A DNA stretch of 64,000 nucleotides. Source: Dimorphilus gyrociliatus. Lineage: Eukaryota > Animalia > Annelida. The notes beneath the pieces were generated by a model. The model was not told the origin of the DNA, searched no databases, and saw only the letters and a list, made by a program, of their open reading frames with translations. A program made the translations under genes and the position numbers. Positions 1 through 57,548 of the stretch are shown piece by piece; the first letter of the stretch is position 1; every line of letters begins with the position of its first letter. The stretch is from assembly GCA_904063045.1 (NCBI GenBank), contig CAJFCJ010000014.1, forward strand, positions 186,001-250,000, written 5' to 3'.

Positions 1-3000
1 TGAATTATCAAATTTACTGAGATTTCCTTTTTCCGTATGGCTTTACGCTAGAAAATACTTGAAACCTCTTTTTTCAACCTATCACTTTAAGGGAAGAGAA
101 TTATGGAAATGGAGGAATGAGGATGTTAGAAAGAGCTTAAAATCATTATACTTTAAAACGGCTGAATCGTTTAAAAATACTCACAAATGCTTAGCCGACT
201 ACTTTAGCAATAAATGGATTAATCATAAACCTTTGGTAGTCCCCGAAAGGTCTATTCAAATTATTGAACCTTACTCTTGTTGCAGATATTTAACTCCTCA
301 TCCTTTACTCTATTCCGAATATTTATACAATTATAGACGTATTACAGAATTAGGCCAACATTTTCTGCACAGCGTCGATATTGAGACGGTTAAATGCAAC
401 ATATATTTTAACCTGGAAAGTCTTATTTCATTAATACAAGCTCTGGGCGTTCATTTTCTTTTAGAAGAAATTGACCTTGTATTGAGACATTTCTTCGATA
501 CGGAACTCCATGTACTTAGAGATACAATTATTGCTTGCCATAAAATCTTAGAGGAAGATACTTTGCAATTACCTGTTGAAATAATAGGCCGATTAAGGAA
601 TATCGAATTCGGAAAGGACTTTCCCAACATCTCAGATCTTATGCTTCAGTGCGTTCAGTGGTGTGATTCGAATACGAAACCTTTGCTAGTTCCGCTTTCA
701 TCGTGGTTGCCAGATCCTAGGCAGAAAACTTTAATTACGTTAAATATTCCATCGACGAAGGCAATTATTACTGGAGAAACTCAATTTCTGACCATTTCAA
801 CTAAAGAGAATATTATAAAAATGTATCATATAGCCTCTAAACAACTTATTCGTTCCTCTTTTCCTTTAAAGTCAAGCGTTATCTTTCTACTCGATTGTAA
901 AGATGACAGAATCGCCGTCTCTACCGCCGACGGAAGCGTTATAATATGGAATTTAATTAACGGCAAATTTGACGGTTTTCTTAAGCAATCGTCTCCAATA
1001 AGAGCCAACGTATTGGCTAACGTTGGCGATAACTTACTATTGGGTAATAGTGACGGTTCTATGGATAGTTTTAACTTGAATACTCTTGAAGTTGTTGACA
1101 AGTTAAAACATCATAGTGACGCCATAACCGGATTACGAGTAAGTAAGGATGGAGAATATACAGTTTGCAGTAAGTCTATAATATGTTTACTCTGTATGGA
1201 ATAAGTAACTTTTAAATGCTCTTTTTTTTTTAACCGTCTCTTAGCATCCAGAGATAAAACTGTCAAATGTTTATCTTCCGATAACTTGGCCGTAATCATG
1301 GAAATATCCGATGAGAATTTAAATCAGCCTATTATTTTGATGTCCATAAGTAGCAATAATCTCTTTCTAGTACTTTGTAAGTTTAATACGTATTGTATAC
1401 TTTCTCTTGTCTTTTTGTTATTTTTTTCCTTTTTTGATGTTATCCCTTTCTTTATCTTGCTTTCATCTATCTTTAGCTTATTCTGAGTATAGGAAGATTA
1501 TAAGGATGAGAAACATGCTGTATATGTATAGGTGTATATATATAGCGGTTAAAGCCATTTTTCATGTTTCCATTTGTATCTAAGGTCACTTTCAAGGGTA
1601 ATCCCTCTTATTTTTTATTGAAAGATTTAGGTAGACCGCAGGAAATTTCGTCCACTTTCATGAAGTTAAAGAATTCCAATAGGAAGCGGGTATTCTCCTT
1701 ATTAATTCTCCTTTATGCATACAGTGTTTAGTTATAATAAGTACTAATATTCCAATTTTAATAGGCATTCTCTCCAATGCCAGTCCATTTCTCTGTTTAG
1801 CGAGGATTTATATACGAGACATTAAATTATATTTTCAGTATTTTGCTGATGAGTGCACCTCCATAAATCTTCTTTTCTCGCTGGAAGCGCAATTGTTTAT
1901 CATAATTTTTTTCGGTAGTCGTTATCTCTTCTACTAGACAATGTTGTCAAATTGCTTTGATAAGAAATAATAGCGATTACTTTTGAAAGTGCATTCGGGT
2001 ATGAAGAAGAGTACGCTAGTATATGCGCTCTTCTCCCTCTTTTCCATCTTCCTTCCGTTCTTCCTTTCATATTTTCCTTTCTCGTATAATTCTTAACATT
2101 ATTCTGTATATTCCCTATTTTTTCTTCATATTAGATTTAGAAGACGGTACAGTACAAATAAGATCCTTGGTTACTGGCACTTTTATACACAACCTTCAGA
2201 ATCCTTTACCAAAATTAACTAGTTTAGCAGTGTGTTCGGAGGGTATCTTTCTCTCTTGTGCAACGGAAAATCATATGGTTCATTTATTTAATATAAGATC
2301 GACAGAACTCTTGGAATCTAATAAGGTGGAATCCAGAGTTCATACAACGTTTCTATTTCCTAATGATTTTGTATTGATGAATGCTGGAGCGGATTCTATA
2401 GAATTTTCTACTCTATTAAAGAGAGAGAATGCTCAAACGGAAAAAGATAGGCATAGGAACGTCGTTAATTGCGTTACCGTTTCGAGAGACGGTAAAATGG
2501 CAGTTTCCGGGTCTAAAGACACAACTTTAAGAGTTTGGTCAGTTGATTCAGGAAGTCTAACAGATATTTTAGAAGGTCATTCGGGCCAAGTTACTTGCGT
2601 CGCCATCGCTAACGAAAACGCGTTTATAGCTTCGGGTTCGGCTGATAGAACAGTGAAAATCTGGAGTATAGTATTGGCGGAGGTGGTGACCAATTACGAA
2701 CAGCATAATTCAACTGTTACTTGCGTTAATGTTTTGGCGGACAATATGAGGATTCTTTCGGCGGAGGAGGAAGGTAAAGCTCTATTGTGGAATGCGGAAG
2801 ATGGTAGTACGTTGCTATCATGTTCCTGCCATACAAATCTGCTGGCAGTTTCTCCAATATCAAAGCTGGTATTCGCAGGTGATGGTGGTTGTACGGCAAA
2901 ATTATGGCTTTTGAATACTGGAGACGTCGTAGGAACGCTAACCCATACGGACAAAATAACATGCGTTGGATTTTCACCAGATAACGAATACATAGTTACT

Positions 3001-3849
3001 GGCTCAATGGATAATAGCTTAAAAATATGGTTAGCCTCCAGCGCTAAATTAACGCAAGTTCTCGTAGAGCATGAAACCCACGTAACTGCCGTCTCCGTTT
3101 GCTCCAAGACAGTTGTATCGGGCGACAAAGATGGTCTAGTTCTACTATGGGATATTGAATTCGGTAACGTGAAACAAAGAATGATGGGTCATACGGCTAG
3201 TATAGAAAGGGTTCTAACAGCGTCCGACTCGTCCATAATATTTACAACTGACTTTGCGGGCGAGATAAGGGTATGGATGTCTAAAACTGCAAAATTATTA
3301 GCAAGAATCGATCTTCATTACCCAATTGAAAATATAGTAATTAGTGTGAGTGCGTCTCACCTTGTTGCGAGAATAACAAATTCGATTCATGTACCGTTGC
3401 TTTGTTTACATAATTCCCCTGCAAAAGTTCTACCAAGGGCGGCTATCGAACTTGGCTCGACAAATAGCCTTCACGTAAATCCGGATATGTTACAGAATCA
3501 AATTTCAGGTTTAAACCTTTCCAGAGAAGTCTCTACCGAAATTGAGAATAACGACGAAAAATTACCGCTCCCCTTTAAATGGCATCAGAAAAGGGAATTG
3601 TCGGAATTTCCCGTTCCCTCAACGATTTTGGCCGAGAGGCAGGTAAAAAGTGACATATATTACGACGAAGAAGAGCCTGGTTCTAGTAGCGGTGGCCTAG
3701 GATCAACAACATCAACCACAATAGCTCCCTTACAAAAAGTTGTTGCCGCTCAACAACAGCACAAAGTACAAAAATCTCTACCAAGAGAGAAAAAAGAAAA
3801 TAATAAAAAGAAAAAAGAGAAGAAATCTTCAATTTGCTGCACATTATAA
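1..3849 (+). CDS. NACHT- and WD40-repeat protein (NWD1/NWD2-like), 3' part; gene starts upstream of the window
   Basis: Frame is open from base 2. Exons ~1-1169, 1245-1376 and 2135-3849 have phase-compatible GT-AG junctions. Post-NACHT helical motifs (LADYF..KW, YNYRRITEL, IYFNLE) are followed by many WD40 repeats (GSKDTTLRVWSV, GHSGQVTCVAI, GSADRTVKIW, GSMDNSLKIW). Confidence 0.85.
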
Positions 3850-8865: not shown

Positions 8866-11800
8866 ATGAAGGACGATATTGTTGTTACCGGTATTTCTTG
8901 CCGTCTCCCCAGCACGTCAAATATGACGGAGCTGTGGAAAAATTTAACTGAAGGTGTTGACATGGTCAGTGAAAACGATCTTTATTGGCCAAGAGGTAAG
9001 ATTTTTCTTCATTATTTCATTCGTTTATAGTGTGCTCTTCAACGGATTAAACATAACCATTTGTTCATAATCTATCACTTCAAAAATCTATTTTCATACT
9101 CCGAATATAGGTATTCATGGCATTCCGAAAAGAAAGGGAGTTCTACCCGAAATTGATCGTTTCGACTCTCTCTTCTTCGAAATCAACCCTAAGCAGAATA
9201 AAGTTTATGATTTTGAACACAAAATTCTTTTGGAAGTAGTTCACGAGGCTATTCTCGATTCTGGTTATAGCTCTGAAGAACTTGCTGGTACTAGATGCGG
9301 TGTACTCGTTGGATCTGAAGGCAGCAGTGGTGCTACCGCCGAATTTTACGTTGATACAGCTGAAATTAACGGATTCGAAACAAAAAATCACGGTTCTATG
9401 ATGTCCAACTACATTTCTTTTTTCTACGATCTTAAAGGTAACCAGCTTTTCTTTATGAATATTCAGTGTTTTTCCTATTTCATCCACTTCTCTCTCATTA
9501 ACAATTTATTAATATCATAATAGGACCAAGTATGACCATAAATTCGGCCTGCAGTTCAAGCTTTCAAGCTCTCCGTCTAGCTTACCGCTATATGGAAGAT
9601 AATCAATGTGATTCTATGATCGTAGCTGGTTCTCACGCTCAATTTTCACCAATGGCTAATTTAACATTAACAAGAGCTATGATGTTGGCTAACGATGGTA
9701 AATGTAAAGTTTTCGATGAATCGGCTGATGGTTACGTAAGAAGTGATGGTATCGTTGCTATCCTTCTCCAAAGAGCTAGTCTAGCTAGAAGAATCTACGC
9801 AAACATTAGAGGCGTCTATGACAACTGTGACGGCAGAAAGAGTCAAGGTAATTTTTGAACAACATAAAAAAACAACTTATATCTCTTAATAAACTCTCTC
9901 TCTCTTCCTTTTATCTTTTTTCGCACAGGTACATCTTTCCCTAGCGCTCCATCCCAAAAGGATTTGTTAAGAGACTTTTATAAAGCAAACAACATGAATC
10001 CCGATGATGTTGTCTATATTGAAACTCACGGAACCGGAACCCAAGTAGGAGATAAAGCAGAAATTACCGCTCTTTCCGAATTCTTTTGCGGAAATGGCAG
10101 AAAAGACTTGTTAATAGGATCAATTAAGTCCAATCTCGGCCATACTGAAGTAACTTCCGGTACGTGTATTTTCATTAATGTTTCGCTTTAGTCAGTACTT
10201 TTCGAATGAAAAGACTAATAAAAATAAAACAAGCTAATTAACTAATTAACTGTTAATTAAAGGTTTGGCAAGCATGTGTAAAGTAATCTTGGCTATGCAA
10301 CACAAACTAATCCCGGGAAATCTTCATCTAAATCAATTCAACTCAAACATCCCCGAACTCTTTGATGGTTCAATGAAGGTTGTTAGGGAAAATATGGAAT
10401 GGGAAGGTGGACCAACTGCTATCAACTCATTCGGATTTGGTGGTGCTAAAGTTCATTGTGTTATTGAACCCTATCGAGAGAAGAAGAACAATGAAATTAA
10501 ATATGATGGACTAAGATTGGCTACCATCTGCGGAAGAACTGAAGAATCCACGAAATTCTTTTTAGAAAATATGCTTGAAAACAAGGATAACCTTGAGTTC
10601 CACTCTTTGACAGAGTCCCTTTCTCTCTCCTCCCCAATGGCTTATCCTTACAGAGGTTACGTTGTCATGAACTCTGAAGAGCAAATCATTACTGTTGAAG
10701 TGAGTTTTATTCCTCATTTGTTAATTCTATCCCCTTTTGTTTCATTTCTAATCTGTTTCCTCATTCCCTAAAACAGGATATCCCAAACAAAGGATCTGAT
10801 AAAGAAGTATGGTTCGTTTACAATGGTATGGGTTCTCAATGGCCCGGTATGGGCAAAGAACTTTTGGGCATGAAAGAATTCAGAGAGAGTTTCGAAGTAT
10901 GCAGCAAAGCTGTTGCCCCTCTAGGCATTGACTTAAAGAAGCTACTCCTGGAATTTAGCGAAGAAGATTGCGAAGAAATAGTAAAAGTTTTACTTTGCGT
11001 AACCGCCATTCAGGTAAGAGAAAAGGGATAAAGATGTCTATGATAACTTTCTCTGAACTTTTTTTTCTAACCATTCCAGATTTGCATAACTGACATTCTG
11101 GAAAAAGTTGGCGTTGTACCAAATGGTATTGTTGGTCATTCTCATGGTGAACTTGCTTGCGGTTACGGTGACAAGGCTTTGAACGCTGAACAAACCATGT
11201 TGATCGCCTACCATAAGGCTATGAGTATCGTCAACCAAAACACAGATGAAGGTTCTATGTGTGCCGTTATCGGAATCACTCTCCAAGAATTGGAAGAGAT
11301 AGTTCCTGAAGATGTCACTATTGCCTGTCATAACTCTGAAAGCATTCATACTATTTCCGGCGCCGTAGAGAATGTCGCGCGATTTATGGAAACATTGAAG
11401 GAGAAGAATATTAAATGCAAGGCAGTTAAGAGTTGCAAAGTGGGTTTCCATAGTTCACTCCTGGAAAAAACCTATCCCGAATACAGAAAAAATTTGGAAG
11501 AGGTTTGTACTGTTTGTTTGTTCTTTCAATGAAAGAAAATATAAAATTTCTGCTCTATATTTATCAGATTATACCAGAACCAAAGGAAAGATCTTCCAGA
11601 TGGATCAGTACTTCTCTTCCTGAAGAAGATTGGGAAGAAGATGTCGGTCTTACTGCTAACCCCGAATATTACATTGCCAACATGGCTAATCCTGTCTACT
11701 TTGTCGAAGCATGCAGTCTTATTCCAGAGAATGCAGTTATCATCGAAATTGGTGCTACTAACCTACTACAGAGTGTTGTTAAGGCTACCGTAGGCAAGAA

Positions 11801-14800
11801 GGCAACCTTCTGCCCAATGATACCTAAAGGACCAACAGATGAAACAACTCTTCTCTCCCATATAGGAAAGTAAGTATCCATCATTAAACATAATTAAAGT
11901 TTGAATGAATAGAATTTAAAGTCTAATCTTTATCTCATTCTCTTCACAATAGAATCTACTGCGCAGGTATTAATGTTAAACCACTGAACTTGGTTCCTAG
12001 AGTGCAATTCCCTGTCAAACTCGAAACACCTATGATAGCACCCTTCTTTAGATGGGATCATTCAGAAATCAACGAAAATCCAGTTGCCAGTTTGGATGAG
12101 GTTCAAAAAGTTAAACCACACGAAAGATTGATGACAATCAAGAACTTGTACGTTGCCAAAGATTCTTGGCTAAGAAGCCATCAAATCGATGGAAGACTTG
12201 TAGTTCCAGCCACCTATTACATTGACTTGCTTATTGATGTTTACTGCGATTTCAATAACTTGAAGAGAGATGACCCTGCATTGACATTCACCATGAACGA
12301 CTGGCTTATTCATAAAGCTTGCTTCATCCCAAATGAAGGTAAGAAGGAGTGTATAGATAAGAATGACTTGTATTAATGCTGTTGCTGTTTCTTTCCCCTT
12401 TATTAGAATACGTACCTATCCGTTTCCAAGTAACAATCTGCAAGAGATCTGGATATTTTGAAATTTTCGAAAGTAATACAGCAGTTGTTTGCGGTTACTT
12501 CATCCATCATCATTCGAGAAAGAATCATTGGAAGAATGTCGTTAAACATAAGATTATCGAACCCTACAGAGCGTCGAAGAACAAACTTCCCGGTTATAGT
12601 CCCGATGATCCAGAAGTATACAAAAAGGAAGAAATTTATCAATTCGTCGCCAGAGCAGGATACGAATACGGTGAAGCTCTACAACTGATTATCAGCGGAA
12701 AGAAGGACAATTGTTATATTACTTGGAATGGAAATTTGGGTGCTTTCTTGGATGGTATCAATCAATATCAGGCTTTTGTTAATGACATCGATACTATCTA
12801 TATCCCGTACGTTTACAATAAGGTCGAAATCGACTTGTACGAATTAAACTACATAAGAAAGCCTGGTGATGCAATCTATTCTGAAATTGCCGATAGAAGA
12901 GATTACCTCTATTCGGGTGGAGTTAGGATGATTGGAAAGAGATCCGAACATATTAATCGTAAAACTCTTGAACAAAATGCATCATTAAACGTCCAAATGT
13001 ACACTCCATACGCCTCATTCTCCGAAGAAGAAACTTACGATAACTATCAAGCTATAGTTCAAAAGATGCTTAAACTTTTCAATGAAGCCGAAAATAAGAA
13101 AGACGTACAAGAAGAGATTATCCAAATGCTTCATAAATGTAAGTGGACTCATCAGACGCTCGATTTTAATCTATTGGAAAAATTGAGAGATTTATGCGAT
13201 ACGGAAAATACTAAGGTTGATAAAAACAAGATGGCGTCCGTTAAGGATGATTTATTCCTATCAACTTTCATTAGCCAAGACGATATCCTTGAGTATTATT
13301 CGGTCATGGATCAAAACAATTTCAACCCCATAAAATCAATTTTACATTACGGTAATAATTCTATCTGGTCGAATGTATTGGCTTTGAATATGGGCGATTT
13401 AACTCAATTCCAACTGTCTGGTATCTTAACCACGGATGAAAAGAACGACAACTTGAAGAAACTCTTGCAATTTATTAAAACCCCTAAGAATGATTTAACT
13501 CAAAGAGGCAACTTCTTCACCTACGTTAGCGGTCTTTTCTCTACCAGCGAAGATGCCGATGAAGAACTTAAATTCTTATATAACCTAATCCAAGAACGTG
13601 GTGGCTTCCTTTGTATTCACGATTTCACTTGCGATAACGATAAAGTAATCGATACTCTAAACTTCTTCAAGAATCACGAACATGAACATAAAAAGGTTGG
13701 CAGAGAGGAAATGTGCAAGAGATTGCAAGATGTTGGATTTGATATATTCTACGAAAAGCACAACAATTTAACTTCAGTTTTCATTTGCCGTCCAGCAGTT
13801 GAAGTTGAAGAGGAGCCAACCATCATTGATATTACCGATTGCGAGAAATTCTCCTGGTTGGGACCTCTACAAGAAGCCCTTAAGAAAATCGAGAAGCCAG
13901 AAGAAAGAATCTGGTTGATTGCCAGCAAACCAGAGCCAAACGGAGTTCTTGGTCTTATCAAATGTCTTAAGAACGAGGAGAACGGCAACAAGGTTAGATG
14001 CTTGATGAATGGCGATCTCAAGGGACAAAGCCTACCTCCAGAATACATGCCCGGTGGAAGTACATTCAAGAAGATTGTCAAGAGAGATCTTCTTTTGAAT
14101 ATCTACAGAAAAGAAACTCTCGGCTGTGTAACACATAGAGATTTTATGAAGCAAAGAAAGAAGCCGAATTACTCCAAGAACGTCTGTCTTGGTCAAAAAA
14201 CTTTGGGCAACATGTCCAGCTTCTTCTGGTGGAACTTGCCCGAATTTTTGGTTGACGAAAAAATGGCTAGTGAACACGGAATGTTGCCAATAAACGTCCA
14301 CTATTCGGCATTAAACTTCAGAGATGTTATTGTCGCTACTGGAAGACTGAGAGAACAAAAGGCTAGAGGAAACGTTAAGGCTCTCGAGAATAAGATTGGT
14401 TCCGAATTTTCTGGTATTACCGAAAGTGGAAGAAGAGTTATGGGAATTGGAGCAAAGATGACGGCTATCGCATCAAAGGTAATCGCCGCCAATAATATGC
14501 TTTGGGATATTCCCGAAACCATGACATTAGCCGAAGGAGCATCAATTCCTATGGTCTACTTTACCGCTTATTTCGCTTTAATTGTTAAAGCTAAAATGAA
14601 GCCGGATGACGTTGTCCTTATTCATTCAGCAACCAGCGGTGTCGGTATGGCTGCGTTGGAAATTTGTAGACAATTCAAAGTAAAAAAAATTCTTTGTACT
14701 GTTGGTACCGCCGAAAAAGTCAAATTCTTACAAGAACACTACAAAATACCAAAGAGTTACATCTACAACTCCCGTAGCACAGACTTCTTTGATAGAGTTC

Positions 14801-16335
14801 TCGATAAAACTGAGGGAAGAGGTGTCGACATTATTCTCAATTCTCTTTCGGATGAGAAATTGACGCTTTCTTTCCAACTTATGACGAACGGTGGAAGATT
14901 CTGCGAAATTGGTAAGAATGATATCGTTAAGAATACTAAACTTGGTATGTCAACTTTCTTGAACGGTGTCTCCTTCCACGCTATTGTTTTGGAGACAATC
15001 TTGGGCAATGACGAAAACAGCGAATTTATCCAGACTAGAAGCCTATTGGAGAATGGCTTGAAAGATGGCTATGTAAAGCCGTTACCTCTACACATCTTCG
15101 ACATGGAAGGTGCCGAAGAATCGTTTAGATTAATGTCCAGTGGTACCCATATAGGAAAGATTATGATTAAGATTAGAAAAGACGACAAACCAGAAGAATA
15201 CACAAGTAGTTTAGAACGCTTAAGAACCTCAGAGAAGATGTTCTGTATGCCCGACCTGGTTTACATTATCACCGGAGGTTTAGGTGGTCTAGGAAATGAA
15301 TTGGCTAAGGCTCTTCTCAATAGATACGCCTACAAGATTATCTTGACAACGAGACAACCTAAAGTTAAAGGATATAAGAAGAAATTGTATAATCTCTTGT
15401 TCAATATCGAATCTAATGCCCAACTAACAGTTATGAACTACGACGTTAGTAACTACGACGAGGCCGTTCAGTTGTTTGACGAAGCTGACAAATTAGGTAA
15501 AGTTGGTGGTGTTTTCCATTTGGCTGGCTTACTACGTGATGCCGAATTCGCAAATCAAACCCAAGAAACATTTAAGGAAGTTTGCGATGTCAAGATTCTC
15601 GGAACCAAAAATATCGATAAGATAACAAGAGAAAGATACGGAAATGATTTGAAGAGTTTCGTAGTATTCAGTTCATTGGCCAGCGGTTTCGGTAACGCTG
15701 GACAAACTCCTTACGGTTTTGGCAACGCCTTCGCCGATTCGGTTTGCGAGCAGAGATGCGCCGATGGTTTAGCCGGAATGTCAATCCAATGGGGACCAAT
15801 GGCCGAAGTAGGAATGTACGAAGAGACCCTTCAACAAAGAAGGAAACAACTGAGAGAAAAGGGAGTGTCGGGAGCCGAGATTGAAGAATTGATGAATACC
15901 GGTATCTTCCAAGCACAAAGAATGGACTCTTATATGGACAGCTTTGAGAAATTTACTCTTACACCAATGCCAGTTGTCACTAGTTACGTTCTTTCCTCGC
16001 CACTTTTATTGCTCAGTCAAGGCAAAAACGATTTTGAAGTTGGTTTACAAGCTGTAGAAAAAGTACTAGGTTAGTATTTTATTGTCCTTTTAAGTGCTCC
16101 ATTTCCATCTTTTTAAAACTTTACCTTTCCAACAGGTGTAAAATCTTTGGCTGCAATGAAACCCGAGACGAAATTGTCCCAGATGGGTTTGGATTCTATC
16201 ATGGCCTCCGAAATCCATATTATCCTGAGAACCAAAATGGGTATGGAACTAAGTCCAGCTGACGTGAGAAACTTATCGCTCGGTGACATCTTGGCATGCG
16301 GTAAGAAAGAAGAGGAAGAGGAGGAAGAAGAATAG
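8866..16335 (+). CDS. FASN: Type I fatty acid synthase-like megasynthase (KS-MAT-DH-pseudoMT-ER-KR-ACP), 2219 aa, lacking a thioesterase domain
   Basis: Exons 8866-8995, 9111-9437, 9524-9847, 9929-10159, 10263-10699, 10777-11013, 11080-11502, 11568-11869, 11953-12338, 12407-16069 and 16136-16335 total 6660 nt, in frame. Motifs: KS SACSSS, HGTGT, KSNLGH; MAT GMGSQW, GHSHG, GFHS; DH HQIDG..VVP and FLDG; ER LNFRD, EIGK; KR TGGLGGLG, LRD, GQTPY; ACP GLDSIM. AATAAA at 16519. May be a paralogue rather than the housekeeping FASN. Confidence 0.9.
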
Positions 16336-18171
16336 ACTATACTAAGTAAACTAGAAGAAGAAGAGGAGAAAGAAGAAAATTTAAACCAAAAAAAACCAAA
16401 AAAAACCCCAAAAATACATATTTTTTAAGCATCCAAAAAATGGAAACAATAGAAGATATACCTCATTAAAAAAAGAAAAGAAAAAGACTTTGAACAACAA
16501 TAACAACAGTGAGAATATAATAAAGCAACAAAATCCATTTCTCACCATCTGAACATCATCAGCATCATCATTATCGTCGAAACGATTCATTAGAGTTCTT
16601 TTCTTTTTTTGTGTTCTCCCTCTTAATTTCTTTTTGTCAACATAATAACACTTTTTATCAACTGAAACATTGAAAATGGTATATGGGTCTTATGTAGTGT
16701 TAACCAGGCATTTACTACATAAATGACAAACATGAAATATTTAAGTTATTTCCTCAACAAGTGACACTTTTCATCAAAAGACTTATGAAACGCCGATGTT
16801 TTTGAATTGTTCAAAACAACAATAACAACGATAACAACAACAACAACAACAACTGCTATTTGTACATTTTATTGAACGTTTAAAAATGAACAATTACTTT
16901 TTTCGTTTTCTAAAAAATATGTAGCGTCACCAAATATTTTTAAAATGTTCTTTTCTTTCTATTTGTATCGATGGCAGTATAAAGCAATCCCTTCGGAAAA
17001 TTGCTTTTTGTAGATATTTACAACTAATTACGTTATATTCAATTAATTGTCGGCGTGGATGTTGTTACTTTGTCCTGTTTTTCGTTTTTAATACCTTTAT
17101 TTTTTTTTCTTTCCATCCTATTTTAATTCCTATCTCTCTCTACAAATGAAAATATATACTCTTGCGCAATCTGTAACTGTTAGTTTAAGGAAAAGGAGAA
17201 GAGAAAGAAAAAATAAAAAGAAAAGGAATTGGCAGTGAAAGGAAGAAGAAGAAAGAAGAAGAAAAAGTCCATTTTTCCTTTCATCCTGTTTCTTGTATGT
17301 TTTTTATTTTTGTTTTAAACACACTACTGCACTTTTAATGAAATTTACATATTCATGAGATAAATTGAACGTAGAATGTTCTTCTTTAAAATACCAGTCT
17401 TTTCAATAATATTTAATAGGTTTATAATATTAATAATTAGATAGGATTACGAATAAGTGGAAAGGGGAGGGAGAAGACTAGAGTAAGAGAGAGAGAGAGA
17501 GAGAGAGAGAGATACTCCATATATACTGTATATATATACATACATATATTTATAGATTTTACATATAGCACATTATATAGAACGAGCTAATACATTAGAC
17601 ATTAAGAGAGAGACTATTGTATATGATTTTTCCGAGAAAAAAGACGATGAAAAGTTATTAATTGAGCGTTTGAAGCTCAAATTTAATTTTGAATTATTTC
17701 TTCCCTACTTTCTCACCCTTTTTACCTTTCTATATTTATAATCTCAGTTTACAAAAAACTAACGGACACCTTATGAAGAAAAACAAAGCGTAAAAGAAAA
17801 AGAAAAGCTTCCTGGCTTGAAGCTTACATGTCTCTTTCTCGTCTGTTTCGCTGCATTTAAATGATGATAATTATTTAGAATAACTGGAAATATTAACAAA
17901 TTACCCAAATTTCTCATTAAATACTCTCTTCTTCCACTTACACGGTCTATGTGCCATGGGCCAGACGTTAATGTATCATTGCAATATTTAAAAAAAATAC
18001 GTTACAGAACATGCGCAATGCGAACCTTATCAATCAGTTGATCACAATTCAAAAATTCACTTTTAATCCTGGTGTTAACTAGCGATATCTTATCCATTTG
18101 TTGCTTTTTTCATCTAATTCATGACATTACGCATTATTTATTGTTAATATTTTTATTAGAAACATCTAAAC

Positions 18172-19483
18172 ATGTTCCAGCAAATAAAAGACTGTATGGC
18201 TTTCTGGTCTATGATATTTTTTCTACTAGGTTTCATCTTGTTTCTATGCCGAAAGTTGGAAAATTTAATCAGATCTTTCAAAGTGGGAGAAATCAAAGAA
18301 AAACGTGTTTTAATTACTGGATGCGACAGCGGTAGGTCAAAATTTTTTAACGAGACATAATTAATTAAGATAGTAATCACGTCTTCCCTTTTCTAATTTT
18401 GTAAATGTCTATATATTTGCTTTCTTTCTTTCTTTCCTCTCTTCCAATCAATTCTTCTCTTATTTACCATTCTTTGCGTTCCTCAATAGGTTTTGGTTAT
18501 CAACTCGCAAAAAGGCTGGACTCTAAGGGACTCTACGTTATAGCCCTTTGCTTACACGATCACAGTTGTACTCGGTTAAAATCTGAAAGTTCGTCCAAAC
18601 TAAGAGCATTCCAAGTGGACGTTTCAAAGGAAGAAGAAATTGAACAATTAAAGTGTCTTTTAAGAGAAGAACTAGAAGAGAAGGGACTACATGCTTTAGT
18701 AAACAACGCTGGAATAAGTAGTTCCGAAGCTGTAGCCGAAATCTATTGGTTAAAGGTGGGAGATTTTCAAGAAGTATTTAATGTCAACGTCTATCCAATA
18801 GTTAATTTTTGTAAACAATTTCTACCATATCTAAAAAGAGCTAAAGGGAGGATTGTTAATATGAGTTCAGCAGCAGCAAAATTAGCCGATCCAATTGAAA
18901 CGTCAATACCTTATCTAACAAGTAAATATGCTATGGCTGCTTATTCAGATTCATTAAGGTTTGAATTAGTTTTTCAACAATGCAACTTTCGTCCTTATGC
19001 CCCATCTTTCTTCATTAATACTAACATGATATACCTATGCATTATGTATTTTCTATAGAATTCTTCTGAAATTGAATAACATTCCAGTTAGCGTTCATAT
19101 TATAGAGCCAGGAATGTTTAGGACCAACTTCATGAACAGCCAAGAGATAATGGCTCGCATTTATAAAGGATTAGATAGAATACAAGAAAAGAAGCTTCGA
19201 AAAATATTTACAGATGTTGCCAATGATCAAGGTTTTTATAAAGGAACCTAATTATTTCACAGCAAATCAACGGCTGATTTTCTTTCTCTTATTATTAGCT
19301 AAAACTCTGAGGGAACGGTTGGAGAGAAAATTCCCACCAGACTCAACTCCGGTTATAGACTGCTACGAAAATGCTATTCTCTCTATTTGGCCGAAGAAAC
19401 GCAGTAGTGTAAACGCGAGTGGTTCAATTCTACTTTCATACTGTCCAAGTTGGTTAAGTGACGATATACTATTGGATATTTAA
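18172..19483 (+). CDS. Short-chain dehydrogenase/reductase, SDR9C (retinol dehydrogenase/17-beta-HSD6-like), copy 1, 328 aa
   Basis: Exons 18172-18331, 18490-18958, 19059-19231 and 19299-19483 (987 nt). N-terminal hydrophobic anchor, TGCDSGFG, NNAG, catalytic Ser (NMSS), YLTSK and IIEPG. Confidence 0.9.
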
Positions 19484-20019: not shown

Positions 20020-21370
20020 ATGATGAACGAAGCTCTCTTTCTCCTAAGTTTGTCGTTAGCCTGTATAGGCTTATATGGCATTATCCGAAGAGTTGAAAGA
20101 TGGTTTAGGTCAGGTTATATTAAGAACTTTAAAAACAAGCACGTTCTTATAACAGGCTGCGACAGTGGTAAGTCATTCTGTTAAGTAAAAACTTAATTAT
20201 TTGACTTTCCGCCTTATTTCCCTTGACAGGTTTTGGCTACATGCTAGCCAAGAGGTTAGATAAATTAGGTATGCCTGTTACTGCTACTTGCCTTACAGAA
20301 GAAGGATGCGAAAGACTTGAATCTGAATGTTCGGCGAGACTAAAAGCTATCAGTCTCGACGTTACGAATGAAGAAGATGTCAACGATTTAAAGGAATGCC
20401 TAGAATACGAACTACGAGAAAAGGGCCTCTACGCACTTGTTAATAACGCAGGAGTAAGTCAGCCAAGAGTAGTGGCAGAGGTTTATTGGTCAAAGAGAGG
20501 AGATATTAGAGAGGTAATGGACGTGAATTCAACAGCAATGGCAAATATAACTTCCAAGTTTTTGCCATTACTATCAAGGGCAAACGGACGAGTAATTAAC
20601 ATGACATCAGCGAGTATGAGATTACCAAATCCTATTGGTGTTACAATAGCTTATGTTGTAAGTAAAGCTGCCGCATCAGCATTCTCTGATGCTTTCAGGT
20701 AAAAATTCTCGTAATTGATTATTTAATTACATCGTTTAATAGTTTCAGAAAGTCTGTATATACACGACTTATATATATATGTATATTTATATACTGTATA
20801 TAAGTGTGTATACAGAAATATAGAATATTAGGCAATTAACAACTTTTTCCTTTAGAATCTTAATGAAGCTTGACAAAAGGAACGTTTCTTTGCACATAAT
20901 CGAGCCAGGGATGTATAAAACTAGTGTTATGGATATTGAAAGAATAACTAAAGCTTACGAAAGAGGAATAGAAAGGATTCCAGATTCATTTAAACTTAAG
21001 AAGACATTCGAAAAACATTCTGCTAACATAAGTAGGTTTCTTTCTTTCTCTATTTTCCTATCCCCTTCCTATTTCCTTTCTCTCCTTCTCTAACTCTTTG
21101 TCTTTTCTTGCCTTTCACTCCGTTCCTCTCAAAATATGAATATATGAATATTTAATAAATTCTCTTTTATTCGCAGTTCGTAGCCTTCGGGAAAAGTTTA
21201 ATAATTCAGCCTCTTCTAATCTGGACGAAGTCATTGACTACTACGAGCACGCAATCCTATCAAAATATCCGAAGAAAAGGTATAATAAACTGGGAGAGCC
21301 TTCAGTTGTATTATCCTACTTTCCATCAATAATTACTGATAATATCCTATCTAAACCTGCTTTATATTGA
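20020..21370 (+). CDS. Short-chain dehydrogenase/reductase, SDR9C-like, copy 2, 328 aa
   Basis: Exons 20020-20167, 20230-20698, 20856-21031 and 21177-21370 (987 nt). TGCDSGFG, NNAG, NMTS, YVVSK and IIEPG. Intron positions match copy 1. Confidence 0.9.
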
Positions 21371-21878: not shown

Positions 21879-22796
21879 ATGAATACTTCTATCTCATTTC
21901 GATATGAAAACTATAATTTTTATTTAATCTATACAATTGTGGAGTTGTGTCTTTCGGTTATTGTTTCTATTTGTAATGGGCTATTTATTGCTTCGATACT
22001 TAAAAGTAAGAAATTATGGACAATAGCCAACTCTTTTGTATTATCATTAGCAGTTGCAGATCTTATTGTTGGACCAGCTCTTCTTTACGAGTCTTTATTC
22101 CTCTTCTACCCACAACTTGGTGATAAATGGCCCACTTGTATATTGCGATTCTCCATCCTCGTCTCCTCTTTATGTAGCTCTATTCTATCGAATGTTTGCA
22201 TAAGTGTTGATCGGTTTATCGCCATAACTCAACCTCTCTATTATTTTACAATGCTTACTAAGAAGAAAGCAATTCTAATGATAGCATTTGCTTGGTGTTA
22301 TATGCCTATATGGTATCTTTTCGTACTGTTTGGCTGGAATACATGGAATCCATCGTTAGACTGTAATAACTATTTGCTCTATCATCCGAAGCCTTTCCAA
22401 TATGGCCTGGTTTTCACATTGATCTCTGGAGTTGCCATTAATTGGATCCTTTATTATAGGGTAATAAGAATTGGATTCAAAGTTGGAGCACAAATAATGG
22501 TTCAAAAGAAGATGGCTAAGAACTTTAAGAGAACTTACCTACAAATGGTTATATTGATACTATTTATAATATGCTGGTTTCCCTATACAGTTATAGCGAT
22601 AATAAGAGTTTTAACAAAATTCGAGGTTACGCTAATTAAAGATATTTGCATTATGATAGGCTATTTCAATTCAGCGATGAACTGGCTGGTTTATGTCTTC
22701 AAAAGTAAAGATTTTCGAATAGCATTTTTTAGGTTATTAAAAGTGAAATTTGTATCAAATAGAGTAGAGTCTCTAACCATAGCAACGGATAATTAG
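21879..22796 (+). CDS. Intronless class A (rhodopsin-like) GPCR, 305 aa
   Basis: Seven hydrophobic segments. TM1 N, LAVAD in TM2, DRF after TM3, CWFP in TM6, NSAMNWLVY in TM7. Confidence 0.88.
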   Translation: MNTSISFRYENYNFYLIYTIVELCLSVIVSICNGLFIASILKSKKLWTIANSFVLSLAVADLIVGPALLYESLFLFYPQLGDKWPTCILRFSILVSSLCSSILSNVCISVDRFIAITQPLYYFTMLTKKKAILMIAFAWCYMPIWYLFVLFGWNTWNPSLDCNNYLLYHPKPFQYGLVFTLISGVAINWILYYRVIRIGFKVGAQIMVQKKMAKNFKRTYLQMVILILFIICWFPYTVIAIIRVLTKFEVTLIKDICIMIGYFNSAMNWLVYVFKSKDFRIAFFRLLKVKFVSNRVESLTIATDN

Positions 22797-23198: not shown

Positions 23199-24134
23199 AT
23201 GAATAGAACGGATGAAGGTACACTATCACCTTCCCATCCAAAATGGATAACATGGATTATACTTCAAATACTAATTATCCTTTCAAACTGTGTTACAATT
23301 AAGATAATGTTTTTGGTTAAGTGCCTACCTCGATTGATTATTAGATTGATATTATCGGTTGCAGTTGCTGATTTTACTCTAGGTTTTGGAGGCTTTATAA
23401 GATCAGTTTATATTCTATCATTCCGAAATGATATATTGTCATCTTACTTCTGCAATCTGGACGTTTTTCTCATTCATGTTTCGCTAATGTCATCTATTGT
23501 TAATATGACGGCTATAACTGTATTTAAGTTAATATCTATTTATTCTCCATTCGTCTACGAAAGGATAGAATCGCGATATGCTTTGATTATATGCCTAATT
23601 TGGTTTATAATACTTTGTATATGTTTAGAAGTGTTGATTGATAAAGACTTGGTAATTTTTGAAAGTAACGCCTTCATCTGCGAGTATGTGTTCAAAATAA
23701 ACGTTCCAACAACTATAAAAGTGATATTTATATTCGTAATACCACCGATTTTAATGTTTACATTGGACGTTCTACTACTAATGACGGCGAGGAAGCAGAT
23801 AAACAAAATACATAATATCCTCTCAACGAATAGTCCTGGTCAACGGAAATTTTTAAAGCAGCATTTAAAAACTGTTAAGACTGTTTTCTTGATGCACATT
23901 GGATTTTTTGTGGCGTGGATACCATTTTCAACAACAAATATTCTACCCAAAGCCTTTATTGGTCATTCATTTGAAAAATTCAAATTTAGCGTCTATCTTT
24001 TAGCATGGAGTAACAGTTTTTGGAATCCAATACTCTATTTATTTACAATTCAAGAATTTCGTCTAAGAATCAAGTTACTATTTTTTAAAATGAAGCCCAA
24101 TATAAATCCATCAGTAACGATAAGCGTCGCATAA
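23199..24134 (+). CDS. Intronless divergent class A GPCR, 311 aa
   Basis: Seven hydrophobic segments. VAVAD in TM2, a Cys at the top of TM3 and in ECL2, AWIP in TM6, NSFWNPILY in TM7. The DRY position reads FKL. Confidence 0.82.
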   Translation: MNRTDEGTLSPSHPKWITWIILQILIILSNCVTIKIMFLVKCLPRLIIRLILSVAVADFTLGFGGFIRSVYILSFRNDILSSYFCNLDVFLIHVSLMSSIVNMTAITVFKLISIYSPFVYERIESRYALIICLIWFIILCICLEVLIDKDLVIFESNAFICEYVFKINVPTTIKVIFIFVIPPILMFTLDVLLLMTARKQINKIHNILSTNSPGQRKFLKQHLKTVKTVFLMHIGFFVAWIPFSTTNILPKAFIGHSFEKFKFSVYLLAWSNSFWNPILYLFTIQEFRLRIKLLFFKMKPNINPSVTISVA

Positions 24135-30651: not shown

Positions 30652-31648
30652 TTGAATTTACAACATACAATTTCTTTTGGAAACATTGAAAAATGCATTT
30701 GGCTATCTTTAGAAATCCGCAAAGATATCCTGTTCCACTTAAGCATGCCAAAAATGACCATTCGAGGTATAGCAGCAAAATTTAATTGCAGCCCAGCTAC
30801 AGTGCACAATATAAAAAATCAGTTCAAGCAATTTAAAACAATAAATGACCTGCATAGGTCTGGTAGATCACATAAAATCACCAGGAGGATGGAACTGCAA
30901 CTCACAAGAACATGCTGATTGAACCCAAAATGGACAGCTAGAGGCATTCTAGAAAATTCTGCAGTTCCTATTCAGATATCACTATCTAGTGTGAAAAAAG
31001 TCCTATGTAAGTACAAACTAAATGGCAGAATTGCTGCAAAGAAGCCAGCCCTAAATAGAAAGCAAATTAAAAGCAGAATAGAATTTTGCAAACAAAAACT
31101 TAAATGGAGAAAAGTTATATTCAGCAATGAAAGCAAGATTAAACTGCATCTTTGTTGTTAGGAGGCCAGTTGGTAAAAGAAATGATCCAAAATATATAAC
31201 TAAAACAATAAAGTATGGTGGTGGTAGCATCATGGTCTTTGGATTTATAAAGTATAACGGAAAGAGAGGACTCTGCAAGGTCCCTACCAGAATGAATGCA
31301 GACGGCTATATAGATATACTCTCAGAAAATGTGTTGCCTACCTACAAATGGGGAGAAATTTTCCAGCAAGATGGAGTGAGCTGCCATACAGCAAAAAGAA
31401 CTATTGCATACATCAAGAATGAGATGAAATTGCTAGAAAACTGGCCTGCAAATAGCCCAGATATTAACATTATTGAGCCCATTTGGGGTATTTGCATGCT
31501 CAGACAGTCTAGAAATTTTAAAGAGCTTTGGGAAAGTTTTGAGGAGGAATTTTCAAAATATCAAATTTTGAGATACAGGGATTGTATGCCTCTATTGAAA
31601 GGAGGCTAAATGCAGTAAGAAAGGCAAAAGGCATGCAAACCAAGTAAT
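30652..31648 (+). pseudogene. Frameshifted Tc1 (DD34E) transposase relic
   Basis: HTH-like N-terminus, VIFSNESK, YGGGSIMVFG, QQDG...34 aa...NSPDINIIE. Split over several frames with a stop. No TIRs recognised. Confidence 0.85.
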
Positions 31649-32029
31649 AAATTTGATAATTTTATCATTTACAATCATTTGCCTATCTAAAAATGTATAT
31701 ATAAAATAAAAAAAGTACTTTTGATGGACCTGATTGATTTGTTATAATTACTTAATAGCAGTCTAAATTCATAGTATTGTAAAAAAAAGAGTGAAAAACT
31801 GATGATTAAAATATAGATATTTTAAAAAATTTTGCCTGATGTTTCATAAGTCATCTCTCTTACAGAAAAAAATATTCCTAACCATAAACTTCATTTGTAA
31901 ATCAAGATATTTGGATTTTTAGAAATTTTTACTCTTGTTATAATTAATAATATTGCGACTGTATTACAGAATTGTGGACAATTCCATCTAAAATTATTTC
32001 TTAGCTTTCTCATGACATTTTGGATACAT

Positions 32030-32224
32030 TCACTCTCTTTTTTTTACCCTCGCTAGCATCACTTAACTTGGTGCTTGACTGTGCTCATTTGTGATGCCAC
32101 ATTTGTGCCACATTGTTCTCTCTCTACTGTCCTAACTTTGGCTAAGTCAAGCTCGCCCTTTAAGTGACACTAACATACTGATATACATTCACTGACTCAC
32201 ACTGACTCACACTAGTACATAATG
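32030..32224 (-). mobile_element. Bel/Pao (family B) 3' LTR remnant, split from its element by the Tc1 insertion
   Basis: The reverse complement shares blocks (GTCACTTAA, TTGACTTAGCC, ATGAGCACAGTCAA, GAGTGAATGTA) with the LTR at 57200-57440. Confidence 0.7.
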
Positions 32225-32226
32225 TA

Positions 32227-33879
32227 CAGCCGCGGTCAAAAATGTTTATACATGAAAAAAAAGAAAATATTTTTTTTAAAAACTCATTTTTCTCTAATTT
32301 TGAGAAATAAAATTATTTTTCTTAAATAGAATGATGTTGTTTAAAGGGTATTTTATGTAATTTCATACAACATTTGTTTTTTTCAGCTTTTAAAAGTACT
32401 TTTTTTTTTTAATTTTAGACAACAAGTGCTTTTTGCAATTAAATTATATAATTTAAAAATGGCCATAAATATCTATAAAAACATGTTTTTTGTCTAAATA
32501 GTTTTTAGAACATTTGAATTTAGAACAAATCTGACTCCGCAGATAATTACTTACATTTCTTTGTCAAAATGAAATATCATTCTCAAATTAGAGAGCTAGC
32601 AAGGGCGAAAAAAGCTGAAATGACCTATAAAGAACTTGAGGCGGACTTAAATATCCCAAAACCTTCACTCCAGTATATCTGTGAGAACAAAAGAGCAGGA
32701 AAACCTGACAAAAGGGGAAGACCATCCAAAGCCAGTGAAAGACTGAAGTCACTAATTAAAAGAGAATGCATAAGATTACAGGAAAAAAGAGAGTTGGCAA
32801 CTGCTAAAAAAATTAAGGATAACTTAAGCCTGGATCTTTCTGAAAGAACCATTAGAAGGATTCTAAATAAAAATGGAGCAAAGTATCTGCCCATTTTGAA
32901 GGTATGCCCTTTGTCAGCAAGAGCAAAAACCACACGATTAAATATACTGGGTGGATGGATTCAGAGCCAAGTTGAATATAAAAATGTGGTCTTCACAGAT
33001 GAGTCCAGGTTTTCGCTGGATGGTCCTGATCATCTGTTAACCTGGCAGCTCAATGACAGGCCAAGGCTCTTTAGAGATAAGCTTCCAGTTGGTGGAGGAG
33101 GAGTGATGGTGTGGGGGTGTATATCCTCAGATGGTGAAGTTTTTATCCAAAGACTTCCCTCCAACATCTCTGGAGAGATTTATGCCGAATTTCTTCAGGG
33201 AACAGTTTTCCCAATTTTGAGGGAAAAATTTGGAGAAAACTTCACCTTTCAGCAGGATAATGCACCCCCACACACTGCCAGAGTAACAATGGATATCCTG
33301 GAGGAGAATGGAATTCAAGTCCTTGATTGGCCTCCATACTCTCCAGACCTCAACCCCATAGAGAATTTGTGGGGTTATTTAAAAATTAAAGTGTATGAAA
33401 TTCAAACACCAAAAACCCTTGACCATTTATGGGACAGGATACAGGAAGAGGTGGACAAAATCAATACAAGCAATAGAGATTTTGTGAAAAATTTATATAG
33501 AGGAATCGGGGAGAGAGTTTGGCAAGTTATTATCAATAAAGGAAACAGAATTAAAAAGTAGTTTTTAGACTGAGACAAAACGCAAAAATTTAGAAAAAAA
33601 ACCTTGACAAACTATGTAATTAAATTTATATAAATATTTTTGGCCATTTTTTTTGGGACTATTTTTAATGATAAATAAACATAGAATTAAAAAACATTCT
33701 TTTTTTTATATAAGAATATTTTTTTCAGTAAACTAAATCCATTTTCTGGTTTATAACATATTCTTCAACAAATATTTAAAAAAAGAACAAACAATTTTGT
33801 TGAAGAAATCCAAAAAAAAATTATTTTATAGAAAAAAAAAATTTTTTTTTTCATGTATAGATATTTATGACCGCGGCTG
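32227..33879 (+). mobile_element. Complete Tc1-family DNA transposon (1653 bp) with IR/DR-type ends
   Basis: Imperfect TIRs starting CAGCCGCGGTCA at both ends, TA target duplication at 32225-26 and 33880-81, and inner repeats of the terminal motif at 32461 and 33625-33645. Confidence 0.92.
32569..33561 (+). CDS. Tc1 transposase, DD34E, intact, 330 aa
   Basis: HTH region, VVFTDESRF, GGGGVMVWG, QQDNAPPH and SPDLNPIENLW. 34 residues counted between the second D and E. Confidence 0.95.
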   Translation: MKYHSQIRELARAKKAEMTYKELEADLNIPKPSLQYICENKRAGKPDKRGRPSKASERLKSLIKRECIRLQEKRELATAKKIKDNLSLDLSERTIRRILNKNGAKYLPILKVCPLSARAKTTRLNILGGWIQSQVEYKNVVFTDESRFSLDGPDHLLTWQLNDRPRLFRDKLPVGGGGVMVWGCISSDGEVFIQRLPSNISGEIYAEFLQGTVFPILREKFGENFTFQQDNAPPHTARVTMDILEENGIQVLDWPPYSPDLNPIENLWGYLKIKVYEIQTPKTLDHLWDRIQEEVDKINTSNRDFVKNLYRGIGERVWQVIINKGNRIKK

Positions 33880-36635: not shown

Positions 36636-36769
36636 TGTAACAGCTGACAAATGGATTCTTCACTATCTGAAAAACAAAGAATATCTTGAACTTCATCATT
36701 TTCCAACATGCTATCATTGTGTAATGTTTCTAATTTTTGTAGCTTAGGTTCCTCTTTCAGGATCATCTT

Positions 36770-37560: not shown

Positions 37561-37867
37561 GTTCTGTGATGGGTGATGTGTTCAATTTCCAAAATCTGGT
37601 GGAATTGTGATTCTATTTGTTTTCAATATGAGAGTTCAATAGCAGAGTAGATAGTTGGTAATAACAGGTTGTCAAATTACCAAATTGTCTTCCAATGTTG
37701 AGGAGTAGATGGATGGCTCCAGTGGAGGTTGTTTCCAGGCTATCTTCCCAGGTCCTTGGGTCCAGATAGGAATGCTTAGAATGAAAATAGTGAGGAGTTA
37801 TATACTTTCAGGTTTGCCTCTGATATCCAATCATCACTTTACAGTTGCCAAACTGTGTAGTTCATAT

Positions 37868-57445: not shown

Positions 57446-57548
57446 GAGACCAAAAGAATATCAAATAAAATTTATACGAAATTCTTAGGAATTTCGTGCT
57501 ATAAGCGAAAAACAAAATCTTATAAAATATATATATAGCATTATATAT

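What the first reader, a model, noticed from the sequence alone, without database searches (positions are those of the whole stretch)
8866..16335. Complete FAS-like megasynthase with no thioesterase
The spliced model is 2219 aa and stops right after the ACP in an acidic tail (CGKKEEEEEEEE-stop), with AATAAA about 185 nt later. No TE-sized ORF lies between it and the next gene. Canonical animal FASN ends in a TE. Chain release must then occur in trans or by cyclisation/transfer, which fits a specialised animal FAS-like polyketide synthase (AFPK-type) rather than the housekeeping FAS (inference).
Basis: partly seen in the sequence, partly recalled or inferred. Interest (0 to 1): 0.8.

Follow-up and report, generated by a model that had tools for sequence, protein, structure and literature searches.

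The report
Release-less fatty-acid-synthase-like gene in worm
[quoted passage not shown] It is a fast-evolving duplicate of the worm's other synthase gene, so it extends a kind of enzyme known from molluscs and arthropods to an annelid.

Summary
An 11-exon gene (8866-16335, + strand) encodes 2219 aa with the order KS, AT, DH, pseudo-ME/pseudo-KR, ER, KR, ACP, and stops after ...LACGKKEEEEEEEE.

- **No hidden TE exon.** RNA contigs from two studies run colinear through the suspected GTAAGA donor, the stop and at least 760 nt of 3'UTR. A TE profile finds nothing in any frame of the 64 kb.
- **Conserved ending.** Two relatives about 80% identical (L001 genomic, L002 mRNA) end the same way and lack that donor. 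dN/dS is 0.04-0.12.
- **Active sites.** All catalytic motifs are intact. The malonyl-binding Arg606 equivalent is Lys, and the ER cofactor loop reads SATSGVG.
- **Ancestry.** The gene sits inside the animal FAS clade as the long-branched sister of DgyrCDS7222 of Dimorphilus gyrociliatus. That holds in two separate partitions (support 99 and 97) and is backed by shared derived ER residues. It does not group with mollusc AFPKs (AU p 0.009).

It is therefore an independently derived, AFPK-like, TE-less paralogue, not a member of the described AFPK clades. TE loss alone does not show a specialised role here. This scan already reported that the sister gene on other DNA of this genome (s1-080431) also lacks a TE; I could not verify that. 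The product and the release route are inferred. New member of a known kind; moderate interest.

The parts
8866..8995 (+). Exon 1: start ATG at 8866 and the KS N-terminus
   Evidence: ORF preceded by an in-frame stop. The orthologous mRNA L002 has the same MKDE start with an upstream stop. Donor GTAAGA.
9111..9437 (+). Exon 2: KS N-terminal domain
   Evidence: PF00109 E 1e-17. The junction matches P0187 at 24/29 and 28/29 residues.
9524..9847 (+). Exon 3: KS with the active-site Cys (INSACSSS)
   Evidence: PF00109 E 4e-26. Motif alignment.
9929..10159 (+). Exon 4: KS C-terminal domain with both His residues (ETHGTGT, KSNLGH)
   Evidence: PF02801 E 1e-23. Motifs.
10263..10699 (+). Exon 5: KS-AT linker
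   Evidence: PF16197 KAsynt_C_assoc E 7e-27.
10777..11013 (+). Exon 6: first part of the acyltransferase (MAT)
   Evidence: PF00698 E 3e-13.
11080..11502 (+). Exon 7: MAT with GHSHGE and Lys in place of the Arg606 equivalent (AYHKA)
   Evidence: PF00698 E 1.5e-20. Arg occurs in 96 of 105 homologues; Lys occurs only in this clade.
11568..11869 (+). Exon 8: end of MAT and linker
   Evidence: PF00698 E 8e-6. tblastn of P0187.
11953..12338 (+). Exon 9: DH N-terminal half with HQIDGRLVVP
   Evidence: PF21089 PKS_DH_N. Motif.
12407..16069 (+). Exon 10 (3663 nt): DH C-terminal half (DGINQ), pseudo-ME, pseudo-KR, ER (HSATSGVG; Lys kept; Glu for the Asp1797 equivalent), KR (GGLGGLG, Lys/Ser/Tyr/Asn)
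   Evidence: PF21149, PF00107/PF13602 and PF08659. Best PDB match is human FASN at E 1e-148. Motifs. dN/dS 0.04-0.12.
16070..16135 (+). Intron 10 (66 nt, GT..AG), removed in RNA
   Evidence: The joint 16067>16134 (cut +2) is seen in contigs of X1 and X3. The public model DgyrCDS7222 breaks at the same position.
16136..16335 (+). Exon 11: ACP (GLDS), acidic tail KKEEEEEEEE and the TAG stop at 16333-16335
   Evidence: PF00550 E 2e-6. Sequence. The same ending is found in L001 and L002.
16301..16306 (+). GTAAGA inside the last codons: a chance donor look-alike, not used
   Evidence: RNA contigs are colinear across it. L001 reads GGAGAA and L002 reads GGAAAC at this place.
16336..17093 (+). 3'UTR, minimum extent
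   Evidence: X1 contigs cover to 16811 and 16865-17093. The X3 contig covers to 17093 and holds 233 further letters.
16688..16727 (+). Conserved hairpin in the 3'UTR (9-bp stem, 16-nt loop)
   Evidence: About 50 nt are invariant in the window, L001 and L002 although coding dS is saturated. No Rfam family matches.

Best explanation
This is a functional, transcribed gene for a 2219-aa iterative type I synthase derived from the animal fatty acid synthase. It has KS, MAT, DH, pseudo-ME/pseudo-KR, ER, KR and ACP, but no thioesterase. It arose by duplication of a FAS-like gene within the worm's own lineage; its sister is DgyrCDS7222 of Dimorphilus gyrociliatus. It then evolved roughly 2-2.7 times faster than that sister and changed the carboxylate-binding Arg of the loading domain to Lys. 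Shown: gene structure, expression, TE absence, conservation, intact active sites and ancestry. Inferred: the enzyme loads a starter and malonyl-type extender units through MAT, possibly with altered selectivity because of the Lys. It builds a largely or fully reduced acyl chain on its ACP. The chain leaves without a cis hydrolase, most likely by back-transfer to CoA through the MAT domain or by a free-standing thioesterase or acyltransferase. The conserved acidic tail may help dock such a partner. I read it as the specialised member of the paralogue pair, AFPK-like in the functional sense, rather than the bulk palmitate synthase.
For: - **Architecture:** domain order by Pfam. FASN is the best solved relative (E 1e-148), ahead of EcPKS1 (1e-113) and EcPKS2 (1e-91).
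- **Gene model:** 11 exons, 6660 nt.
- **Expression:** spliced RNA contigs from two studies run colinear through the stop into the 3'UTR. The 7281-nt X1 contig fits 94 nt of 5'UTR, 6660 nt of CDS and about 527 nt of 3'UTR.
- **No TE:** none anywhere in the window or in L001.
- **Conserved ending:** L001 and L002 (78-83% identical) stop at the same place with acidic tails.
- **Selection:** dN/dS is 0.04-0.12 in every domain region while dS is saturated.
- **Active sites:** catalytic motifs are intact.
- **Loading domain:** Lys at the Arg606 position occurs only in this clade. The role of R606 in binding extender carboxylates, and MAT-mediated off-loading to CoA, are described in PMC6954729.
- **Ancestry:** sister to DgyrCDS7222 in the pseudo-KR/ER/KR tree (99) and the KS-AT tree (97), plus shared SATS and Glu characters in the ER.
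- **Divergence:** 33-34% identity to FASN, against 45-52% among FASNs of different phyla.
Against: No product, substrate or partner has been observed. With all reducing domains apparently active, the product could be an ordinary saturated fatty acid. Another agent reports that the sister gene also lacks a TE. If so, TE loss is ancestral and either paralogue, or both, could serve primary metabolism. I found no TE-bearing FASN from this species, but I could not search its genome. Lys for Arg is conservative and may only tune activity. The ER loop (SATSGVG) and the Glu for Asp1797 might weaken the ER. No thioesterase-like gene lies in the window.
Confidence: 0.6

Rival explanations
1. It is a housekeeping fatty acid synthase, or one of two isozymes. 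The dinophilid lineage lost the cis TE from its FAS before the duplication, and bulk fatty acids are released in trans. On this reading TE absence says nothing about specialised chemistry.
For: All catalytic domains, including DH, ER and KR, are intact and under purifying selection. The two paralogues share derived ER residues, so shared ancestral changes do exist. Another agent's note (s1-080431) says the sister gene is also TE-less. The only D. gyrociliatus protein among the 120 hits listed in the KS-AT word search was that sister. RNA contig depth in X3 is high, although the tool warns that depth cannot rank genes.
Against: This copy has by far the longer branch (1.79 against 0.67; 1.28 against 0.70) and the lowest identity to FASN. 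It alone changed Arg606, whereas DgyrCDS7222 keeps AYWRG. These patterns are typical of the neofunctionalised copy. The TE status of the sister was not verified here: its public model stops in an intron before the ACP.
Confidence: 0.27
2. The TE exists but was missed. It would be reached by alternative splicing from the GTAAGA at 16301, or it lies in a misassembled or more distant region.
For: A GTAAGA donor-like hexamer sits 33 nt before the stop. Contigs drop rare isoforms (tool caveat).
Against: Contigs of two RNA data sets are colinear with the genome from exon 10 through the stop to 17093 and show no joint at 16301. The hexamer is absent in L001 and L002, which still stop at the same place. 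The L002 mRNA carries a 311-nt 3'UTR that holds the conserved hairpin. There is no TE signal in 64 kb, nor in the 1.9 kb downstream of the gene in L001.
Confidence: 0.03
3. It is a decaying or non-functional FAS duplicate, or a bacterial or contaminant FAS-like gene.
For: The branch is long, and bacterial 'animal-type' FAS-like proteins exist among the hits.
Against: dN/dS is 0.04-0.12 across three lineages and there is no frame disruption. The gene is transcribed and spliced. It has ten GT..AG introns and lies inside the animal clade with support 99-100, apart from the bacterial group.
Confidence: 0.02

Closest known systems
Animal cytosolic fatty acid synthase (FASN; e.g. human 8vf7, pig 2vz8, Drosophila 6fn6)
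   Same: It has the same domain order up to the ACP, including the FAS-specific pseudo-KR and KS-AT linker families, and the same catalytic motifs. It falls within the animal FAS clade.
   Different: There is no TE. Identity is only 33-34%. The Arg606 equivalent is Lys. The ER loop reads SATSGVG, and Glu replaces the Asp1797 equivalent.
DgyrCDS7222, annotated 'Fatty acid synthase' of Dimorphilus gyrociliatus (P0239)
   Same: It is the sister gene in two independent partitions. It shares the derived ER residues and the intron position before the ACP exon.
   Different: Identity to it is only about 37% overall (46% in KS). It keeps Arg606, has a shorter branch and is 41% identical to FASN. Its public model is cut before the ACP, so its C-terminus could not be compared here.
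Mollusc animal FAS-like PKSs (AFPK mo-clades 1-3; EcPKS1/EcPKS2, PDB 9cq1/9ctk; Lin et al. 2024, PMC10764717)
   Same: Both derive from the animal FAS, lack a TE, and are about as diverged from FASN domain by domain.
   Different: This gene has a separate origin (AU p 0.009 against one clade). The ER and the other reducing motifs are retained here, whereas the Elysia sequence has a degenerate ER loop. Pyrone-type self-release, proposed for EcPKS1/2, needs unreduced keto groups and is not expected from a fully reducing enzyme (inference).
Arthropod FAS-like proteins annotated without a TE (e.g. Amblyomma americanum XP_077491843.1, millipede GAB6031064.1)
   Same: These are FAS-like, end about 45-65 residues after the ACP serine, and nest among TE-bearing FAS.
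   Different: They are unrelated lineages. Their TE absence rests on gene models or ORF calls only and was not checked with RNA.

Membership tests
Animal type I fatty acid synthase (FASN) | Domain order KS-MAT-DH-pseudoME-pseudoKR-ER-KR-ACP | tested here: met
   Pfam on the exon pieces. The alignment to FASN structures covers pseudo-KR to KR.
Animal type I fatty acid synthase (FASN) | [quoted passage not shown] | tested here: not met
   The stop comes 50 codons after the ACP serine. The TE profile gives E>3 in all frames of the 64 kb. RNA is colinear through the stop.
Animal type I fatty acid synthase (FASN) | Placement in the animal FAS clade on KS and on reducing-domain trees | tested here: met
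   Support is 99-100 for the animal clade that holds window exon 10. The KS-AT tree used the orthologue P0187 as proxy (support 95).
Animal type I fatty acid synthase (FASN) | MAT with the Ser-His dyad and Arg606, which binds the extender carboxylate | tested here: not met
   GHSHGE is present, but Lys stands at the Arg position in the window, L001 and L002. Arg occurs in 96 of 105 homologues.
Animal FAS-like PKS (AFPK, Lin et al. 2024) | [quoted passage not shown] | tested here: met
   The PKS outgroup is separated with support 100.
Animal FAS-like PKS (AFPK, Lin et al. 2024) | Separated from true FAS by the authors' HMM score pattern (AFPK-finder) | not testable with these tools
   The tool is not on hand. 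As a proxy only: 33-34% identity to FASN against 45-52% among FASNs, and a stem 2-4 times longer.
Animal FAS-like PKS (AFPK, Lin et al. 2024) | Membership of a described mollusc or arthropod AFPK clade | tested here: not met
   It is sister to DgyrCDS7222. One clade with the Elysia and Pecten sequences is rejected, p-AU 0.009. The group was named after the tree had been seen, and only one Elysia AFPK was sampled.
Animal FAS-like PKS (AFPK, Lin et al. 2024) | Makes a product other than a plain saturated fatty acid | not testable with these tools
   This needs enzyme assays. The sequence shows all reducing domains intact, which does not favour a classical polyketide.
Canonical type I PKS (bacterial, fungal or animal PKS clades) | Groups with PKS modules; lacks the FAS-type pseudo-KR | tested here: not met
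   FAS_pseudo-KR E 1e-21. PKS modules match only the ER-KR part, at about 170-250 bits against 400-510 for FAS-like proteins.

The most novel reading that the evidence does not exclude
The dinophilid annelid lineage lost the FAS thioesterase before its FAS gene duplicated. The worm would then have no TE-bearing FASN at all, and even its primary fatty-acid synthesis would depend on release in trans, by MAT transfer to CoA or by a free-standing enzyme such as the acyl-ACP-thioesterase-like gene noted elsewhere in this genome (s1-084294). That would be an exception to the rule that every animal FAS carries its own TE.
Probability: 0.22. Interest if true: 0.75.

Novelty: new member of a known kind. 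Interest (0 to 1): 0.5.

Why it matters
The survey that defined AFPKs found them only in molluscs and arthropods and states that all animal FAS carry a TE (PMC10764717). Here a third phylum has a TE-less FAS derivative. It is expressed, held under strong purifying selection in at least three lineages, and arose independently from the worm's own FAS. That makes loss of the release domain a recurrent route of FAS diversification in animals. It also offers a small, culturable worm with a compact genome in which release in trans can be studied, and in which the effect of the natural Arg606-to-Lys change can be measured.

Tried and rejected
- **Word search with exon 10** found only one close relative, because full-length kin exceed its length limit. 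Re-querying with P0001 and then P0187 solved this.
- **FastTree** placed the window clade outside all animal FAS. The site-heterogeneous model moved it inside, so I treat the first placement as long-branch attraction.
- **The DgyrCDS7222 locus** could not be fetched: no gene with exactly this product is on record. Its TE status is therefore unverified.
- **The search of earlier findings by sequence** was blank.
- **'noTE' labels** on metagenome-derived hits come largely from ORF-type gene calls that stop at introns, as P0001 does. I did not count TE losses on the tree.
- **The SDR neighbours as release enzymes:** they are DHRS9-like alcohol dehydrogenases, not thioester reductases. I do not claim a cluster.
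- **Rfam** has no family for the 3'UTR hairpin.
- Exons were handled one at a time by reference, and the KS-AT tree used the stored orthologue P0187 as proxy.
Full report
**What is there**

The + strand between 8866 and 16335 holds a chain of open frames. [quoted passage not shown]

I placed the splice sites using the protein of a relative (P0187) as a guide. This gave 11 exons separated by GT..AG introns of 65-115 nt. There is no internal stop, and the total is 6660 nt, which is 2219 aa plus a TAG at 16333-16335. The protein ends ...LSLGDILACGKKEEEEEEEE, 50 codons after the ACP serine and with the four-helix ACP complete.

**Is a TE hidden somewhere?**

- I built a profile from 91 TE domains of FAS proteins found here. 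It recognises 126 control proteins but gives nothing better than E 3.7 in any stop-to-stop frame of the 64-kb window. tblastn with the same tails is equally empty.
- The next gene, starting at 18172, is a DHRS9-like short-chain dehydrogenase, followed by a tandem copy and two intronless GPCR genes.
Contigs from a coral metatranscriptome (X1) and from a second data set whose contigs are spliced (X3) both remove the 66-nt intron 10. They then run colinear with the genome across the GTAAGA at 16301, the stop and the 3'UTR, to at least 17093. The pieces break at 16303-16416 only because the tool skips the GAA repeat; the record coordinates stay in register.
- The X1 contig is 7281 nt long. With window position 14800 at its position 5285, it fits 94 nt of 5'UTR, the 6660-nt CDS as modelled and about 527 nt of 3'UTR.
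- Contigs can miss rare isoforms, so a minor TE-bearing isoform is not strictly excluded.

**Conservation**

Two relatives were found. L001 is a genomic contig with the same intron layout. L002 is a 7034-nt mRNA contig that encodes P0187.

- They are 78-83% identical to the window protein over exon 10, and synonymous sites are saturated (dS 1 to over 2).
- dN/dS is 0.04-0.12 in each of the DH/pseudo-ME, pseudo-KR, ER and KR parts.
- Both stop at the same place with acidic tails (ACGEKEDEEED and ACGNKEEEEDD).
- Neither has GT at the position of the window's GTAAGA.
- A block of about 50 nt in the 3'UTR that forms a 9-bp hairpin is invariant in all three.

The TE-less end is therefore an old, selected state, not an assembly or annotation accident.

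**Active sites**

- Present: the KS Cys and both His residues, the MAT GHSxGE, the DH HxxxGxxxxP and DxxxQ, the KR GGLGGLG with Lys/Ser/Tyr/Asn, the ER Lys, and the ACP GLDS.
- Departure 1: the residue equivalent to Arg606 of mammalian MAT is Lys in the window, L001 and L002. It is Arg in 96 of 105 homologues with a GHSxGE motif, and Lys occurs nowhere else in that set. Arg606 binds the carboxylate of extender units, and its removal alters specificity (PMC6954729).
- Departure 2: the ER cofactor loop reads SATSGVG instead of SGSGGVG, and the Asp1797 equivalent is Glu. The ER is as constrained as the other domains, so I take it as probably active. From my own knowledge, mitochondrial enoyl reductases work with an NSGVG loop. 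That is a lead, not a test.

**Ancestry**

- A full HMMER search found no representative more than 38% identical over pseudo-KR/ER/KR.
- FastTree put the window clade at the base of all animal FAS-like proteins. Under a site-heterogeneous model it falls inside the animal clade with support 100.
- The last word search brought in DgyrCDS7222 of Dimorphilus gyrociliatus (P0239) as the best hit.
- With P0239 included, the window clade is its sister with support 99 on pseudo-KR/ER/KR (window exon 10 included). It is also its sister with support 97 on KS-AT (orthologue P0187 as proxy).
- The two genes also share the SATS loop, the Glu for Asp1797, and the intron position before the ACP exon. These characters do not depend on tree inference.
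- The window branch is 2-2.7 times longer than the sister's.
- Identity to Lottia or bird FASN is 33-34% for the window clade and 41% for DgyrCDS7222. FASNs of different phyla share 45-52%.
- Holding the window clade together with the Elysia AFPK and the Pecten FAS-like protein costs 29 log-likelihood units (p-AU 0.009). I named that group after seeing the tree.

**Species**

Other agents' notes name the genome as D. gyrociliatus. My evidence agrees with that: the nearest named relative comes from that species, and the genome has short introns and low GC. This does not prove it.

**How it probably works**

Shown: this is an intact, expressed, selected, TE-less FAS paralogue. The rest is inferred.

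- It is an iterative synthase that reduces each round and so builds a mostly saturated chain.
- Its loading and extender choice may be shifted by the Lys.
- It releases the chain without its own hydrolase.
- The two routes I rank first are back-transfer to CoA by the MAT domain, which off-loads short acyl groups in mammalian FAS (PMC6954729), and a free-standing thioesterase or acyltransferase.
- Pyrone-type self-release, proposed for EcPKS1/2 (PMC10515154), needs unreduced keto groups and is less likely here.
- No thioesterase-like gene lies in the window.
- The DHRS9-like neighbours are not release enzymes by family, and I do not claim a cluster.

**Comparison with what is known, and a caveat**

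The AFPK survey says that all animal FAS have a TE, that mollusc AFPK clades 1-3 lack one, and that AFPKs were found only in molluscs and arthropods (PMC10764717). This gene works like that kind of enzyme in being FAS-derived and TE-less. It is not a member of the described clades, and it may not make a polyketide at all.

This scan already reported the sister gene on other DNA of the same genome as TE-less (s1-080431). I could not check that. Its public model stops inside the intron before the ACP, and its locus could not be fetched. TE absence then cannot by itself mark this copy as specialised. My preference for a specialised role rests on the faster evolution and the Arg-to-Lys change.

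Noticed in passing
window 16688-16727 (also L001 8745-8795, L002 6973-7020): A block of about 50 nt in the 3'UTR forms a 9-bp hairpin with a 16-nt loop. It is invariant in three lineages whose synonymous sites are saturated. There is no covariation because the sequence does not vary, and no Rfam family matches.
   Followed up: partly
window 18172-19480 and about 20020-21367 (+): Two tandem, spliced genes for membrane-anchored short-chain dehydrogenases lie here. Their closest solved relative is human DHRS9 (E 1e-24). Both are covered by spliced contigs in X3. Another note (s1-083163) proposes a cluster with the synthase; I found no evidence for or against co-function.
   Followed up: partly
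window 21879-22796 and 23199-24134 (+): Two intronless rhodopsin-family GPCR ORFs lie side by side (7tm_1, E 7e-30 and 8e-22).
   Followed up: no
window about 34000-42000 (-) and 52000-60000 (+); 31127-33561 (+): Two regions with strong strand composition skew. The region at 52-60 kb holds BEL/Pao-type retroelement ORFs (RVT_1, Peptidase_A17); the two large ORFs tested in the 34-42 kb region matched no Pfam family. Two Tc1/mariner-like DDE_3 transposase ORFs lie at 31-33.6 kb. Observed only.
   Followed up: no
P0239 (DgyrCDS7222, public annotation), C-terminus: The public model ends ...SVLG followed by 19 odd residues. It reads into the intron at the position of the window's intron 10 and so lacks its ACP exon and whatever follows. 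Domain-based surveys that use this model would misjudge its C-terminus.
   Followed up: partly
window 59-3849 (+): Two WD40-repeat ORFs lie upstream (381 and 608 aa). The second has many beta-propeller family matches.
   Followed up: no
hits P0062, P0127 and others: A group of bacterial proteins (Gammaproteobacteria, vent metagenome) has the full animal-type FAS architecture, including a TE and in one case a true methyltransferase. It branches just outside the animal FAS clade.
   Followed up: no
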